DNA of 25,610 nucleotides from Bugula neritina (lineage: Eukaryota > Animalia > Bryozoa), in NCBI GenBank assembly GCA_964035545.1, contig CAXIUT010000124.1:59701-85310 (forward strand). The letters are read 5' to 3'. Position 1 is the stretch's first letter, and each line of letters opens with the position of its first letter. The notes beneath the pieces are model-generated. The model ran no database searches. It was given only the letters and a program-made list of their open reading frames with translations, and was not told the origin of the DNA. A program made the position numbers and the translations under genes. Shown piece after piece: positions 5,199-25,610 of this stretch.

Positions 5199-5679
5199 TT
5201 TTTCTTTTCTTTTCAATTCTAAAAGTTACTTCATTGCAAAAAATCTTTAGAAATTTTACCACATAGATAAAGTAATAATATATTTTAATATTTATCTTTA
5301 TGATCATATTTTAAAATTACTATCAAATGAATCTGCATATTAAATAACCTAAAAATTCCAGCTTTTAGAACTCAACTAAAATAGTATTAAATAATCGATT
5401 AGAACATTAATATTGAAACTATATAATATAATTCTTTAAATAGTCTTACAACCTATATATTATGAACACACTTCTACTATCGTTTCAGAATAAATAATAT
5501 TATAGATATATTTTTAGTAAAAATTATCTCGTGTAACTAATAAATACTTATTTTTTATGAATCCTCAAAAATGAAAGAAAGCATAAATCAGTTATTAAAC
5601 AAAGAAATGAAGTCTACTTATATTAATATTATTTTATTTAAAGCAAAATTGTTAAATATCGTATCTTGACAAGTAAAAA

Positions 5680-5768
5680 CCCAACCCCAACCCCAACCCC
5701 AACCCCAACCCCAACCCCAACCCCAACCCCAACCCCAACCCCAACCCCAACCCCAACCCCAACCCCAA
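5680..5768 (+). repeat. Internal telomeric tract (CCCCAA)n, 89 nt
   Basis: Perfect C4A2 repeats in left-end orientation inside an AT-rich intergenic region. Confidence 0.98.
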
Positions 5769-7248: not shown

Positions 7249-9182
7249 ATGTTAACTAATATTCAAACAACTAGAAAATCTTGGAATTAATCTAGAAACA
7301 ACGGAATACAACCTAAACTCAGTCTTGAAGGTCACAACCTTTTTCCTCAAATATCTTATGCAAGAACATATCAATCTATTCGATAGCAACCTTTTCTTAA
7401 TATTCTTAAAAAACCCATCATGACTCTCTATGATCGAGCCCAGCTGCGTTCATCGTCAAAACCAGTTTGTATCGTTGGGATGCAAAAATAAGTTGAAACT
7501 CGACATATCAGGACAGGATATATGAAAAAGACGAGACATTAAATCAAAGAAACCAGTTTCAAAAAAGACAATTCTATCATATTTACACCATCTTTTTCAA
7601 AAACCTAAATTTAAAGCATTTGCAATACTTCTAATAATCTTACATCTGCTAGCAAAAATCTTCCTGAAGATAGTAATTTTTATATTATTGGTCCTGGAAA
7701 TAACAAAGATATTGTTGAAGAAGTAATTAAAAGAAGAAATGGTTGGGTGTCTTCAAGTAGTTATCTTTTAATATAGAAAATTCTATTTTTCATTTTCGAT
7801 GGGAACAAGCAAGACCTAAATTTCAAAACCTATCAGCTCCTCATAAACAAGTTTTAAATCACTTACCAGGTCATGAAGTCATCAGTGATAAAGGAAATCT
7901 TTTGTTTAATCTCAAAATATACTGTTAAAAACATGAATAAACATTATACAAGATAGTACCAGCATCATTTATCCTCGATTTCAAAGCTTAAGATATTGAA
8001 TAATAAATGAAAAGGTTTATTATCTTCTTTTCACACTGTTTCAAAGAAGATATCATCATAGAATAGTTTGATTAATCAAAATAATTTAAAAATAATTCAC
8101 CTAAAAAAATTAATAATGAAGCATCAAATATAAATTCTCCTAAGAAAATATTTGATAAAAATAATAATTTAAGAAATTCTCAAATAAAAACAACATCAAA
8201 ATCATTAAATGATAGTAATATTTACTAAAATAAGAAGAAATAATAAAAAAATCTCTATAAACACTTTATAAACCAATTAAAACCACATTATATCTTCAAA
8301 GATATGTCAGTTGTTAAAAAATAAAGTTCATGGGTCTCAATCTAAGTTGATCCTGTCTATGGATAAAATTCTCTTTGGCTCTTAAAACCAAGTGATCTCA
8401 ATAGAGGAAGAGGCATCAAACTCTTTAGAACTGTCTAATAACTAGGATAATTATTGAGAAATTAACTTAATAAAAATGGTTAAGGAAGTTTTATTGTTCA
8501 GAAATATATCTAAAAACCTTTGTTAATCAATTAAAGAAAGTTTGATATTAGAGTATGGGCATTGGTTACTCACACAAAATAACTTTACTTTTTCCAATAA
8601 GGATACATCCGTTTAGCAAGTTAAACTTTTACATTAGACTCTTCAAGTTTATTTACTCATCTGACTAATAATGCAGTTCAAAAACATTCAACTAACTATG
8701 GTTGCTTTGAGTAAGGCAATATTTTACCAATATCTTATCTCTATGATGAAAATTATATCTAAAAAAATGACCTTTTTTCACAAATAAAACGTATTATCAT
8801 CTTATCAATTAAAGCTGCAGGACCTAAACTTTATTAAGCCTCAGAAAAGCATCAAAGTATATCAGTAGGAAATAGATAATCAAAGAAAGTGCAATCAAAA
8901 ATGAAGTATTTTGAAATATTTGGATATGATTTCATGCTTGACAGTAATAAACATGCCTGGCTTATTTAAGTAAATACTAATCCTTGTCTTTAGATAAGTA
9001 ATAAATGGCTTTCTACAATCGTTCCTAGAATGCTTGATGATGCCTTTAAGTTGACTCTTGATAAAATCTTCCCTCCTAAAAAAATATCTATGGAATAAGT
9101 TGTAAAATACAAAGTTTAAGGATATCAGGATGAAGTCAATATGTGGGAATTCCTTGAACTTCAATAAAATAATTTAAATTGA
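7249..9182 (+). CDS. Tubulin-tyrosine ligase-like (TTLL) family protein; intron 7757-7776
   Basis: Motifs IIGPGNN, WLLKPSDLNRGRGI, VQKYIEKPLLI, RKFDIRVWALV, HLTNNAVQK, FEIFGYDFMLD, WLIEVNTNPCLE. Alternative in-frame ATG at 7198. Confidence 0.95.
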
Positions 9183-9286
9183 TCAAAGGCTTGATAACTT
9201 TATAATATTAATAAGCAACATATAGCCTTTATTTATCAACTAATTTATTCTTATCTTATAGATGAAATATAAGAGTTTAGATATTT

Positions 9287-9297
9287 AAAACCCATAA
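9287..9297 (+). promoter_or_regulatory. Upstream/proximal sequence element (AAAACCCATAA) of the telomerase RNA gene
   Basis: CCCATAA core ~55 nt upstream of the predicted RNA 5' end, matching in sequence and position the element known upstream of Tetrahymena telomerase RNA and snRNA genes. Confidence 0.8.
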
Positions 9298-9346
9298 GGT
9301 AATATTTAAAATATTTTTGGATATTTATTCAGATGGATAATATAAG

Positions 9347-9522
9347 AGTGGAAGTATCAATACATTCTGACTCTTGTCAGTCACTCAACCCCAAAAAAAT
9401 CCCAAATTTGAGGAGTTTTCCCTTTCACCTTAGTAAATAAAAAGGGGATGCTACTTCCTGCAGCGTTAAAATCTTGTATGTTCCTCACCACTCAACATCC
9501 AAGATCGACTGCCACAATTTTT
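9347..9522 (+). ncRNA. TER: Telomerase RNA (ciliate type, ~175 nt, Pol III)
   Basis: Template CAACCCCAA 9386-9394, preceded by GTCA plus 2 nt. CATT 9363-9366 then stem II CTGAC/GTCAG (9367-9380). Stem I GGAAGTA 9350-9356 / TACTTCC 9452-9458. Pseudoknot TTGAGG 9408-9413 / CCTTAG 9428-9433 and TTCCCTTT 9418-9425 / AAAGGGGA 9441-9448. Stem IV 9460-9512. T5 at 9518-9522. The 5' end is approximate. Confidence 0.93.
9518..9522 (+). terminator. Pol III oligo-T terminator of telomerase RNA
   Basis: TTTTT just 3' of stem IV. Confidence 0.7.
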
Positions 9523-9672
9523 ATTGATTTTATTGAAAATAATCTTTTACTATTACCATCATCAATTATAGCTAAAAGGAAGTTAATCAATCATTAGTAG
9601 TTCTTGATAGTTAAAGTTTTATTTAATTATAAACATTTGAGTAGGTTTTGATATTATTGACGTTAGGTTATA

Positions 9673-11121
9673 ATGAGTTCAGACAGCGAAGACAGCTTTG
9701 TAGAACCCCGCCAGGCATCACATCTCAACAGTATCTGGAATAGTATACAAAAAACTAAACAACTCAGTCATTTACTCGATCACAGAACAAATCTACCTCA
9801 TCAATATTAAGCTCAATCCCTAAGAAAAGACAATGATTGCTAAGTTAGATAGTATAAATAAAATCTAACTCATTTACTAAAGAAGATTAAAATGCTATAA
9901 GAACAAAATAGACAGTTAGTTGCTAAACTAGAAGAATAAAAATAAACACAAGAAATAGGAATGTCTCGTTTGAAGAAAAACTATGAATAAAAGTTGAATA
10001 GTCAAATGAAAAGATTAAAAACAGCTGAAAAATAAAATTTAACAGCTAACAAAGACAATAGTTCTATGTAATCTTTAATTAGAGATAATTAAAAATTAGT
10101 TTTAAGAATCAAAGCAATGTAGCTTTAAAAGAAACATTATTAAATGGAAAAAATAAAATTATCATAAGTCAATGAAATATATTTATCATAACTATAAAAA
10201 GGAAACAACCCTCAATCGAATATCATTGGAAAAGGCTAACAATTGCTATAGTTATAATAAGCAAATCAAACTATTTGTCGTCTTGTTTAACTGTTAAGAA
10301 GAACTGAATAATATCGTTAATATGCTCCTATGATGCAAGAAATCGGTAATATGCATTATTTGAAGAATTTACTAAAAAGATTAAGAGCAAATCAACTGAA
10401 TTTCAAACCAATACAAAAGAAAGTATGTAGTTGTAGAGAAGTAAAATTGAACTAGAAGCTATTATGGACACCAGTTGAATGCTACAAAATAATGCTAGCA
10501 ATGAAGATGAAATATGACTATTTGAATGAAGATTGTATTGAGTAAGTTTTATTCTAAATAAATAAAATATATAAAGCTAAAGAATAAAAATCTATATTAA
10601 AAATAAAACAAACATATGAACAAGAAATACTAAAACTTAAAAAGCAAATTTAATATGGATATGATTAGATTTTAACTAAAAAACAAATAACAAGACTTAA
10701 AAAATAACTAAGAGTTGTAAAAAGTATACAAAAATCAAAAGCACCACCTAAAGTAGATTATCTTATGAATAATGGACAACTAACTGATCAACTAAAACTT
10801 AAATAAAAATAAATCAAATTGTTAAATTAAAGAATACATCTATTCTAAACTTAAAATGGATTTCAAGATAAATCACTTTATTATTAAGGCACTTTAGCTG
10901 CCTTAGATAGAGTTCTTTCATAGCTATAAAATAATTAAGCCAGTTTGAAAGAATTCTAAGTCAGATTTAGAGACAGAGTAGAAGATAACACTGAACCTTA
11001 AGATTGGCTATCAAGTTATAAAGAATTTTTCTAAATAATAGGATAAATCAGTGCAAGTTTAGCCTAAAGAGTACTTACTTTGAAATAATCTGTTCTAAAA
11101 AAGATGAGCAAAGCAGAATGA
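9673..11121 (+). CDS. Coiled-coil protein, 482 aa, unknown function
   Basis: Intronless ATG to TGA frame of 1449 nt under UAR=Glu; E/K/L-rich heptads. Confidence 0.85.
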
Positions 11122-13208: not shown

Positions 13209-13429
13209 TTATATCTTTTTATCAAATTTTTATTATATCTAATTTTATTATCCATACTTAATATTCTAAGTCTTAAGTCTTAAATAATAGTTTTATAATC
13301 AAGAATTACTGAACAAAAAGGATAAAGAATTGACGTAAAGAAGACTAAATTTTGATTATTTTGATAGAAAAAGTAATATTAGTTAAATAGCTTAAGCTTG
13401 ATACGTTTGTATAATAAATATATTTTTTT

Positions 13430-14704
13430 ATGTAATCAAGAAAGAATCGTATTACAAATATAAAAGATTCTTTGAAAAAGATGACTATTTTATCTAAAAA
13501 TAGCATTAAAGTATAGGCAAAAGAATAAAAAAATAGACATCGACGACAAAGTTTGCAATTAGCTTTTGATGAAGTTTAGTCGGAAAAATTATTAAGAAAA
13601 TTTTCAGAATAAGATTAAGAATAAGAAAAAAGCATGACTAACAGCTTTGAATAAAAATACATTTTACATGAAAAAGTAGGAGAAGGAGGTAATGCTTTAG
13701 TTTGCACATGCTAACATAGGAAAACCAATAAAATTTATGCTGTAAAGAAAGTAAAAATGGATTAATAGCATTACCAAGAATTAAAGAAGAACTTCATTAA
13801 TATCAAAGTACTAAAACATCCGAATCTAATCAAGTATTGTGCACTTTACTTTGATCTTTAAAAACACTTAGCATACCTTATAATGTAGTATTTTCCTTTT
13901 CAAAACCTTCTATAATTAAACCTTAAAGATGAAAGCTAGTTCCAAATAATCATAACAGAAGTACTTACAGCCATTGTATATCTCCATTAAAATAATATAT
14001 GCCATCGAGATATAAAACCCTAAAATATTCTATACGACCCATTTTCTAAAAGAATTAAAATAATTGCCCAACCCCAACCCCAACCCCAACCCCAACCCCA
14101 ACCCCAACCCCAACCCCAACCCCAACCCCAACCCCAACCCCATATTGCACCAGAAATACTTATGGGAGGAGGCTATGATGAACAAGTAGACCTTTGGTCA
14201 GTTGGAATTACACTGTATAAACTAGTAACAGGATATACACCTTTTGAATGTGAGTATCATGGTGAAACAATCAATAGTATTATAAAAAGTTAACCTAATT
14301 TTGATAGATCTATTTGGCAAAACTACAGTTTTTTCATCAAAGACCTTACTCATCGTCTTCTCAAACATAAAAAATAAAGGTTGTCGGCAAAAGAAGCTTT
14401 GAAACATCTCTGGATTACTCAAGCGAGTGAAGGGAAACAGCTCAGAAGAGGATCATAAAATAACCATGAAATCAAAATGACAAAGCACTAGTCAGGAAAT
14501 TTGAAATTCTACCCATTTGAAGGGCAATAGTAAAGTGTTCATAGAAAAAATGCATCATCTAAGGAATAAGGATAAAAAAGTAATGAAAAGACAAATGATG
14601 GATAACCTCCAAAATTAAAAATAACAAAGCTAACTCTTTTATAAAACAAATAGTTTGATTTAAGTGATAGTTAAGAGTAAACATCACCTGGTACTTCAAA
14701 ATGA
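13430..14704 (+). CDS. Ser/Thr protein kinase (CAMK-like) whose DFG/activation segment is replaced by a telomeric tract
   Basis: VGEGGNALV, YAVKK, HPNLIK, IMEY, CHRDIKPENIL, RIKII-[tract]-IAPEIL, VDLWSVG; both halves in one frame. Start codon uncertain. Confidence 0.9.
14067..14142 (+). repeat. Internal telomeric tract (CCCCAA)n, 76 nt, within kinase CDS
   Basis: Perfect C4A2 repeats in left-end orientation. Confidence 0.98.
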
Positions 14705-25506: not shown

Positions 25507-25610
25507 GGGGTTGGGGTTGGGGTTGGGGTTGGGGTTGGGGTTGGGGTTGGGGTTGGGGTTGGGGTTGGGGTTGGGGTTGGGGTTGGGGTTGGGGTTGGGG
25601 TTGGGTTGGG
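25507..25610 (+). repeat. Right telomere (TTGGGG)n
   Basis: G4T2 repeats to the end of the sequence, with one TTGGG variant near the tip. Confidence 0.99.

What the first reader, a model, noticed from the sequence alone, without database searches (positions are those of the whole stretch)
9287..9522. Complete telomerase RNA gene hidden between two protein genes, with a template matching this chromosome's own telomeres
Seen: CAACCCCAA (9386-9394) is 1.5 copies of the complement of TTGGGG. It lies 2 nt after GTCA, which follows a hairpin CTGAC-tctt-GTCAG preceded by CATT. A 7-bp long-range helix (GGAAGTA/TACTTCC) encloses the template and an H-type pseudoknot (9408-9413 with 9428-9433; 9418-9425 with 9441-9448; AAATAA linker). 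A long terminal hairpin (9460-9512), a T5 terminator and an upstream AAAACCCATAA at about -55 complete the unit. Known: this is the order and spacing of Tetrahymena TER (CAUU, stem II, UGUCA-NN, CAACCCCAA, pseudoknot, stem I, stem IV, U tail; Pol III with an upstream element). Inference: this is the TER of a UAR=Glu (peritrich-type) ciliate. It is highly diverged outside the motifs and invisible to ORF-based annotation. I do not know of a described TER from this group, but cannot check that here.
Basis: partly seen in the sequence, partly recalled or inferred. Interest (0 to 1): 0.93.

Follow-up and report, generated by a model that had tools for sequence, protein, structure and literature searches.

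The report
Peritrich ciliate telomerase RNA gene
This 490-bp spacer between two protein genes almost certainly holds the single-copy telomerase RNA gene of a ciliate that reads UAA/UAG as glutamate; it is a diverged member of the Tetrahymena-type family that the standard Rfam threshold misses, and RNA evidence is still lacking.

Summary
Window 9347-9522 (+) carries every motif described.

- **Rfam:** the ciliate telomerase RNA model RF00025 aligns end to end at 33.3 bits, below its cut-off of 52.
- **Copy number:** it is the only candidate in the 216-Mb assembly by three separate searches.
- **Homologues:** four metagenomic sequences share the same layout. This includes a ciliate PSE (ACCCATAA) 59-60 nt before stem I, a TATA-like box 24-26 nt after the PSE, GUCA-NN-CAACCCCAA and a T5-6 terminator.
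- **Covariation:** 90% of cells pair, against 37-46% in slid controls. 30 of 44 pairs change on both sides.
- **Genetic code:** tubulin and an orthologue pair show TAA/TAG = Glu, never Gln (the peritrich code).
- **Partner protein:** an intact TERT lies on another ciliate contig.
- **Telomeres:** they are C4A2/G4T2, matching the template.

Caveats:
- No RNA data could be found, so expression is untested.
- Stem II is not conserved in all homologues.
- The ciliate rides in an animal genome assembly and is incompletely assembled.

I found no described peritrich telomerase RNA in the searchable literature. This scan's notes on this genome list no earlier one. Verdict: a well-supported new member of a known family.

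The parts
9287..9297 (+). Proximal/upstream sequence element AAAACCCATAA (core CCCATAA 9291-9297) of a type-3 small-RNA promoter
   Evidence: ACCCATAA is present in all 5 homologues, 59-60 nt before stem I. It matches the ciliate PSE consensus TgACCCATnAA found 50-60 nt upstream of snRNA, RNase P, SRP and telomerase RNA genes (PMC3177221).
9322..9327 (+). TATA-like box TATTTA
   Evidence: A TAT(A/T)(A/T)(A/G) box starts 24-26 nt after the PSE in all 5 homologues. PSE-TATA spacing sets Pol III use in ciliates and plants (PMC8287931).
9347..9522 (+). Predicted telomerase RNA transcript (about 173-177 nt; the 5' end is inferred from promoter geometry, the 3' end from the T5 run)
   Evidence: RF00025 model positions 1-165 align from 9347. 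CM R2 scores 179 bits on 9345-9522 and finds a single copy in the genome.
9350..9356 (+). Stem I, 5' strand (GGAAGUA), pairs with 9452-9458
   Evidence: Helix 1: 7 of 8 pairs change on both sides and 92.5% of cells pair. The helix sequence differs in all 5 homologues.
9363..9367 (+). CAUUC box 5' of stem II (part of the template boundary element)
   Evidence: CATTC in the window, L040 and L119, and CGTTC in L055. It is not recognisable in L066.
9367..9380 (+). Stem-loop II (CUGAC-UCUU-GUCAG)
   Evidence: 5 bp in the window and L040, with one compensatory A-U to G-C change. It is rearranged in L066 and L055 and absent in L119.
9380..9383 (+). GUCA motif 2 nt upstream of the template
   Evidence: Invariant in all 5 homologues. 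It aligns to the GUCA of the RF00025 consensus.
9386..9394 (+). Template CAACCCCAA (1.5 repeats complementary to GGGGTT), followed by an invariant A-run to 9399
   Evidence: Invariant block C42-A55 of the alignment. The window's telomeric tracts are C4A2/G4T2.
9408..9433 (+). Pseudoknot stem IIIa (9408-9413 with 9428-9433; well supported for 9409-9413/9428-9432)
   Evidence: Helix 3: two pairs have double changes (A-U/G-C, G-C/A-U) and two have G-U/G-C changes. The competing local hairpin shows no covariation.
9418..9448 (+). Pseudoknot stem IIIb (9418-9425 with 9441-9448) and the A-rich linker 9434-9440
   Evidence: Helix 4: 6 of 8 pairs change on both sides. It is predicted independently in each homologue's MFE fold. 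The AAAUA(U)AAA linker is conserved.
9452..9458 (+). Stem I, 3' strand (UACUUCC)
   Evidence: See the stem I 5' strand entry.
9460..9512 (+). Stem-loop IV, a long terminal hairpin with a 5'-side internal loop
   Evidence: Helices 5 and 6: 13 of 17 pairs change on both sides and 89-100% of cells pair. All five independent folds predict it.
9518..9522 (+). T5 run, Pol III terminator and 3' oligo-U tail
   Evidence: A T5-T6 run sits at the same aligned position in all 5 homologues.
7719..9182 (+). Upstream neighbour: tubulin-tyrosine-ligase-like gene (3' part), ending at TGA 9180-9182
   Evidence: Two collinear stop-free pieces hit PF03133 at profile positions 153-173 and 227-253. TGA-only ORF.
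9673..11121 (+). Downstream neighbour: conserved coiled-coil-like ORF of unknown family
   Evidence: A 59%-identical orthologue lies downstream of the TER homologue in L066, in the same orientation. No Pfam hit on its stop-free pieces.

Best explanation
Window 9347-9522 (+) is the telomerase RNA (TER) gene of a peritrich-code ciliate whose macronuclear DNA sits inside an animal genome assembly.

Inferred mechanism:
1. RNA polymerase III starts a few nucleotides before stem I. It is directed by a type-3 promoter: PSE ACCCATAA at about -55/-60 and a TATA-like box at about -25.
2. Transcription stops in the T5 run, giving an RNA of about 175 nt with an oligo-U tail.
3. The RNA folds as a Tetrahymena-type TER. 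Stem I closes a core that contains the boundary element (CAUUC, stem II, GUCA), the template CAACCCCAA and an H-type pseudoknot. Stem-loop IV follows.
4. Bound to the ciliate's TERT (gene on contig C313), the template is copied into the GGGGTT repeats seen at this genome's chromosome ends.

Shown here: sequence motifs, single copy, conserved and covarying structure, promoter and terminator geometry, genetic code, presence of TERT, and telomere repeat type.

Inferred only: transcription, the exact RNA ends, TERT binding and template use.
For: - RF00025 aligns over its full length, 1-165, at 33.3 bits with E = 0.0012 on 401 nt. It is the only RF00025 candidate in 216 Mb.
- It is the only GTCANNCAACCCCAAAA in the assembly and the only hit of my own model R2, at 179 bits.
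- Four metagenomic homologues score 48-110 bits, full length, with a model built from the window sequence alone.
- Structure count on the five sequences: 90.2% of cells pair against 37-46% in slid controls, 30 of 44 pairs change on both sides, and 0 of 500 shuffles reach this.
- Each sequence folded alone gives stems I, IIIb and IV.
- The PSE-to-stem I distance is 59-60 nt and the PSE-to-TATA distance is 24-26 nt in all five. All five have T5-6 terminators.
- The PSE matches the published ciliate consensus (PMC3177221). Ciliate TERs are Pol III type-3 genes (PMC8287931).
- Telomeres are C4A2/G4T2.
- The only TERT RBD hit in the assembly is on ciliate contig C313. It has in-frame TAA/TAG and intact T, A, B', C and E motifs.
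- Linkage to the downstream gene is conserved in L066.
Against: - There is no RNA evidence. All four runs laid on the locus are DNA-like contigs, and no RNA run holds it.
- The Rfam score is below the curated gathering threshold (33.3 against 52).
- Stem II and the CAUUC box are not conserved in all homologues.
- The covariation alignment was fitted to the structure by Infernal, which inflates pair counts somewhat.
- There are only five sequences, and the organism is unknown for three of them.
- The ciliate part of the assembly is incomplete, because its U6 gene is missing. A second TER gene cannot be strictly excluded.
Confidence: 0.9

Rival explanations
1. A different small structured RNA, or non-functional intergenic DNA, that resembles TER by chance because it happens to contain CAACCCCAA.
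For: The bare pattern GTCANNCAACCCCAAAA is not specific. More than 110 of the 120 metagenomic pattern hits are unrelated, many of them in bacterial genes. The Rfam score is sub-threshold.
Against: The whole RF00025 architecture is collinear. The 20-nt GUCA-template-A-run block is invariant while the flanking helices covary. The pseudoknot and stem IV are conserved. A PSE/TATA/T-run geometry typical of ciliate TER genes is present in all five homologues. The locus is unique in the genome.
Confidence: 0.04
2. The overlapping ORF 9333-9527 (64 codons under the TGA-only stop code) encodes a small protein, and that explains the conservation.
For: The frame is open in the window, and at least one sense frame is open in each homologue. 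TGA-only ORFs are common in this AT-rich genome.
Against: The equivalent frame carries in-frame TGA codons in L066 (RNA position 97) and L119 (position 4). The homologues differ in length by non-multiples of 3: 178, 176 and 172 nt. Substitutions are paired compensatory changes in helices, not third-position changes. A PSE/TATA/T5 small-RNA gene frame surrounds the locus.
Confidence: 0.02
3. It is a genuine TER-family gene but not the active one. A paralogue or allele elsewhere in the incompletely assembled ciliate genome supplies telomerase, and this copy is silent or specialised.
For: The ciliate fraction of the assembly is incomplete, since no ciliate U6 was found. TER paralogues exist in other lineages, for example beetles and Andrena bees (titles and abstracts listed).
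Against: Only one copy was found by three searches. The promoter, template, terminator and all helices are intact. No variant is listed between 9300 and 9525 in four runs from three studies, while the flanks vary; that table was truncated. Each homologue-bearing metagenomic contig also carries one copy.
Confidence: 0.04

Closest known systems
Tetrahymena-type (oligohymenophorean) telomerase RNA, Rfam RF00025 Telomerase-cil
   Same: The order of elements is the same: 5' tail, stem I, CAUU(C) box, stem II, GUCA-NN, template CAACCCCAA, A-rich 3' flank, pseudoknot with an AAAUAA-like linker, return strand of stem I, stem-loop IV and oligo-U end. It also shares the G4T2 telomere repeat and a Pol III type-3 promoter with a PSE at about -55 (PMC3177221, PMC8287931).
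   Different: It scores only 33 bits against the cut-off of 52, and the homologues score 30-32 bits or nothing. Stem II is a short 5-bp/4-nt hairpin. The 3' A-run has 7 A's. At about 175 nt it is longer than the 165-position model. The host uses UAR=Glu rather than UAR=Gln.
Spirotrich telomerase RNAs (Euplotes, Oxytricha, Stylonychia; Lingner, Hendrick and Cech 1994, as cited in PMC8287931)
   Same: Small Pol III RNAs with the same four-helix plan. The gene has an ACCCATnAA PSE 50-60 nt upstream (PMC3177221).
   Different: By my own knowledge, not tested here, the spirotrich template is a permutation of C4A4 rather than C4A2. No close sequence similarity is expected.
Heterotrich telomerase RNAs (Stentor, Condylostoma; Fajkus et al. 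2021, PMC8287931)
   Same: They were found by the same logic: a USE plus a template within 200 nt, homologues, and a covariance model. They are also Pol III type-3 genes.
   Different: Their telomere motifs differ (CCCTAACA, CCCTTACA) and RF00025 does not detect them at all. The present RNA is detectably RF00025-like.

Membership tests
Ciliate telomerase RNA (Rfam RF00025, Tetrahymena type) | Template of about 1.5 repeats complementary to the organism's own telomere repeat | tested here: met
   CAACCCCAA lies at 9386-9394. Telomeric tracts are C4A2/G4T2. The template is invariant in 5 homologues.
Ciliate telomerase RNA (Rfam RF00025, Tetrahymena type) | Conserved (U)GUCA motif 2 nt 5' of the template, with an upstream boundary hairpin (stem II) | tested here: inconclusive
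   GUCA-NN is invariant in all 5. Stem II is clear in the window and L040, rearranged in L066 and L055, and absent in L119.
Ciliate telomerase RNA (Rfam RF00025, Tetrahymena type) | Long-range stem I enclosing the template and pseudoknot | tested here: met
   7 of 8 pairs show compensatory changes and 92.5% of cells pair. Independent folds agree.
Ciliate telomerase RNA (Rfam RF00025, Tetrahymena type) | H-type pseudoknot 3' of the template | tested here: met
   In stem IIIb, 6 of 8 pairs change on both sides. In stem IIIa, 2 pairs have double changes and 2 have single changes. The competing hairpin shows no covariation. No 3D or chemical probing was possible.
Ciliate telomerase RNA (Rfam RF00025, Tetrahymena type) | Terminal stem-loop IV followed by an oligo-U 3' end | tested here: met
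   In helices 5 and 6, 13 of 17 pairs change on both sides. A T5-6 run is present in all five.
Ciliate telomerase RNA (Rfam RF00025, Tetrahymena type) | Score at or above Rfam's gathering threshold (52 bits) | tested here: not met
   33.3 bits, full-length, E = 0.0012 locally and 0.156 genome-wide. This is a curated detection threshold, not a biological feature.
Ciliate telomerase RNA (Rfam RF00025, Tetrahymena type) | Pol III type-3 promoter: PSE/USE about 50-60 nt upstream plus a TATA box at fixed spacing | tested here: met
   ACCCATAA lies 59-60 nt before stem I and the TATA-like box 24-26 nt after it, in all 5. The consensus is taken from PMC3177221 and PMC8287931. An internal control on this ciliate's own U6 gene was impossible because that gene is not assembled.
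Ciliate telomerase RNA (Rfam RF00025, Tetrahymena type) | Expressed as a discrete small RNA that associates with TERT and templates repeat synthesis | not testable with these tools
   No RNA run holds the locus and all laid runs are DNA contigs. A TERT gene is present and looks intact.
Peritrich nuclear genetic code (UAA/UAG = Glu), as the host's identity | In-frame TAA/TAG align with conserved Glu, not Gln | tested here: met
   Alpha-tubulin: TAA aligns to E 12 times and D once, TAG to E once, and neither to Q. Orthologue pair: window TAR against L066 gives E 22, TAR 14, Q 1; the reverse comparison gives E 7, Q 0. Phylogenetic placement by rRNA was not done.

The most novel reading that the evidence does not exclude
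The window RNA and its four environmental relatives define a separate peritrich-clade TER subfamily. In it the stem II hairpin of the template boundary element is dispensable: 5 bp in two members, rearranged in two, absent in one. The boundary would then be set by the invariant GUCA and its single-stranded flanks, or by stem I. This differs from the stem-II-dependent TERT RBD anchor described for Tetrahymena.
Probability: 0.3. Interest if true: 0.55.

Novelty: new member of a known kind. Interest (0 to 1): 0.45.

Why it matters
Telomerase RNAs evolve so fast that each newly sampled lineage helps separate essential structure from incidental structure. This locus, its four environmental relatives and the covariance model built from them add a branch of Oligohymenophorea that the Rfam threshold does not reach. 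That branch includes at least two UAR=Glu ciliates.

The five sequences confirm that several features persist across it: stem I, both pseudoknot stems, stem IV, the GUCA-template block and the PSE/TATA geometry. They also flag stem II as variable.

In practice, the result gives annotators of peritrich genomes a model to find TER. It also gives experimenters a defined 175-nt target in a lineage that appears to have many short telomere-capped chromosomes, and so presumably a heavy telomerase load. It does not change the picture of how ciliate telomerase works.

Tried and rejected
- **Rfam at gathering threshold:** nothing over the whole window and only a tRNA on the rest of contig C133.
- **RNA evidence:** The look-up of sequencing runs gave five holders, none recorded as RNA. 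The four laid runs are DNA-like contigs crossing the intergenic spacers, so they give no ends, strand or expression.
- **Internal promoter control:** I looked for this ciliate's own U6 gene. The three U6 genes in the assembly are animal-type, sit on contigs of tens of Mb and lack CCCATAA. Patterns for a ciliate U6 found none.
- **MAFFT alignment of the five RNAs:** it misaligned the variable 5' stem. I replaced it with an Infernal alignment to a single-sequence model.
- **More homologues:** Viral contigs gave 0. Genome contigs gave 2 hits on bacterial MAG contigs that score 11-14 bits, so they are chance template matches.
- **Alternative hairpin (columns 56-60/65-70):** it competes with stem IIIa but has no compensatory change, and 437 of 500 shuffles are as good.
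- **Code and telomeres on the homologue contigs from ORF statistics alone:** uninformative for L119 and L055.
- **Pfam on pieces of the downstream gene:** no hit.
- **Hargrove et al. 1999 (PMC148703):** not held in the library. I took the PSE consensus from PMC3177221 instead.
- **One count of structure pairs:** it failed on a string-length slip and was not needed.

Full report
**Observation.**
- AAAACCCATAA 9287-9297
- a TATTTA box 9322-9327
- GGAAGTA 9350-9356 pairing with TACTTCC 9452-9458
- CATTC 9363-9367
- hairpin CTGAC-TCTT-GTCAG 9367-9380
- GTCA 9380-9383, then two bases
- CAACCCCAA 9386-9394, followed by an A-run
- two interleaved helices, 9408-9413/9428-9433 and 9418-9425/9441-9448
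- a long hairpin 9460-9512
- T5 9518-9522

The window carries C4A2 tracts at 1-89, 5679-5768 and 14066-14143, and G4T2 at 25511-25606. The template therefore matches the local telomere repeat. The stretch folds better than shuffles, with z = -3.0.

**Direct family test.** Rfam finds nothing at gathering thresholds. A permissive scan of 9200-9600 puts RF00025 (ciliate telomerase RNA) first. It aligns over all 165 model positions at 33.3 bits against a cut-off of 52, with E = 0.0012. The alignment places stem I, the CAUUC box, stem II, GUCA, the template, one pseudoknot stem, the return strand of stem I, stem IV and the U-tail in the family's order.

Across the whole 216-Mb assembly this is the only candidate by three searches:
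- the only RF00025 candidate with E of 10 or less
- the only GTCANNCAACCCCAAAA, with 0 for the reversed control
- the only hit of my own five-sequence model, at 179 bits

**Homologues and covariation.** One metagenome scan with the GUCA-NN-template pattern returned 120 loci. Most are chance hits in unrelated DNA. Four show the whole architecture:
- L040:2271-2446(-)
- L119:245-416(+)
- L055:6171-6342(+)
- L066:3809-3980(-)

A covariance model built from the window sequence alone recovers them full-length at 110, 55, 48 and 62 bits. Nothing else scores above 18 bits.

On the resulting alignment, 90.2% of cells form standard pairs, against 37-46% when partners are slid by 1-3 columns. 30 of 44 pairs change on both sides, and 0 of 500 shuffles reach any of the five measures. 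By helix:

| Helix | Pairs changing on both sides |
|---|---|
| Stem I | 7 of 8 |
| Stem IIIb | 6 of 8 |
| Stem IV | 13 of 17 |
| Stem IIIa | 2 double and 2 single changes |

A local hairpin that would compete with stem IIIa shows no covariation. This alignment was fitted to the structure, so I also folded each sequence alone. Stem I, stem IIIb and stem IV appear in the window, L040, L119 and L055. In L066 stems I and IV appear, and IIIb appears in an altered register. The 20-nt GUCA-template-A-run block is invariant.

Stem II is the weak point. It is 5 bp in the window and L040, with one compensatory change. It is rearranged in L066 and L055 and absent in L119.

**Promoter and terminator.** In all five sequences:
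- CCCATAA begins 59-60 nt before stem I
- a TATA-like box begins 24-26 nt after that element
- a T5-6 run follows stem IV at the same aligned place

Jung et al. 2011 report the ciliate PSE consensus as TgACCCATnAA. It lies 50-60 nt upstream of snRNA, RNase P, SRP and telomerase RNA genes (PMC3177221). Fajkus et al. 2021 state that ciliate TRs are Pol III genes with type-3 promoters, and that USE-TATA spacing sets polymerase choice. They list ACCCATAA-like USEs in several lineages (PMC8287931). Transcription by Pol III from about 9346-9350 to the T-run is therefore an inference from conserved geometry. It has not been observed.

**Whose gene is it?** The assembly is not a pure ciliate genome.
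- It has contigs longer than 29 Mb with animal-type U6 genes that lack the PSE.
- It also has hundreds of C4A2/G4T2 tracts on many small contigs.
- Contig C133 is 85,310 bp, and the window is its last 25.6 kb.

Only TGA behaves as a stop codon in the window. Two tests show that TAA/TAG encode Glu:
- Alpha-tubulin genes on ciliate contigs, compared with the animal-type alpha-tubulins of the same assembly, place TAA opposite Glu 12 times and Asp once. TAG falls opposite Glu once, and neither codon falls opposite Gln.
- The gene just downstream of the TER (9673-11121) has a 59%-identical orthologue downstream of the TER homologue in L066, in the same orientation. In that pair the window's TAR codons face L066 GAR 22 times, TAR 14 times and Gln once. 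L066's TAR codons face window Glu 7 times and Gln never.

Both organisms therefore use the peritrich-type code, and the TER-to-gene linkage is conserved. Earlier follow-ups of this scan on other pieces reached the same view of the organism. I checked the code myself.

The upstream neighbour is a tubulin-tyrosine-ligase-family gene ending at TGA 9180-9182.

**Protein partner.** The only telomerase RBD hit in the assembly is on small contig C313, with in-frame TAA/TAG. Read with the Glu code, it gives a TERT of about 1,100 residues. The T, A, B', C and E motifs are present, with one frame change that fits a 20-nt intron.

**Rival readings.**
- **Protein-coding ORF 9333-9527.** This fails. The equivalent frame has in-frame TGA codons in L066 and L119, the homologues differ in length by non-multiples of three, and the substitutions are helix-compensating.
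- **Chance.** The combination of full-model collinearity, covariation and promoter geometry excludes it.
- **A silent paralogue.** This cannot be strictly excluded, because the ciliate fraction of the assembly is incomplete: its U6 gene is missing. Nothing points to a second copy.

**What is missing.** Five public runs from three studies hold the locus under three organism labels, as expected for a ciliate riding on animals. The four I laid behave as DNA, and no RNA run holds the locus. In those runs no variant is listed between 9300 and 9525, while the flanks vary by about 2% in one strain. The variant table was truncated, so I give this little weight.

**Novelty.** No paper in the searchable library combines 'telomerase RNA' with peritrich names. 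The 2021 and 2025 surveys list Oligohymenophorea, Spirotrichea and Heterotrichea as the ciliate groups with known TRs and do not mention peritrichs. The peritrich genomics paper does not mention telomeres. This scan's notes on this genome list no earlier TER finding.

**Verdict.** This is a well-supported new member of the Tetrahymena-type TER family. It is useful and clean but not surprising to a specialist, so I score interest at 0.45. 

Noticed in passing
window 5679-5768 and 14066-14143; also G000 contigs C10, C11, C14, C15: Telomeric tracts lie inside contigs and are co-oriented. In the window, C4A2 follows unique sequence with no G4T2 partner. A TGA-only ORF (13334-14704) reads straight through the tract at 14066-14143. 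Simple end-to-end concatenation of chromosomes would give G4T2 next to C4A2, so these are either unusual real molecules or assembly joins.
   Followed up: partly
G000 as a whole (C2, C4, C8 against C10-C313): The assembly mixes chromosome-scale contigs that carry animal-type U6 and intron-containing tubulin genes with many small telomere-bearing ciliate contigs. The ciliate is a passenger, and DNA runs under three organism labels hold its TER locus.
   Followed up: partly
G000:C313:8784-9167 (L158): The only Telomerase_RBD (PF12009) hit in the 216-Mb assembly belongs to the ciliate. No hit was found on the large animal-type contigs, so the host either lacks a recognisable TERT or the exon-wise search missed it.
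   Followed up: no
window 9673-11121 and L066:1382-2839(-): A conserved protein of about 480 aa (59% identity) with coiled-coil-like composition and no Pfam hit lies directly downstream of the TER gene in two UAR=Glu ciliates. This is conserved linkage of unknown meaning.
   Followed up: partly
G000:C10:2209-2835 (L133): The ciliate beta-tubulin gene has no in-frame TAA/TAG within its coding part. The two alpha-tubulin copies have 6 and 14 from the Met onward. TAR-Glu usage therefore differs sharply between genes.
   Followed up: no
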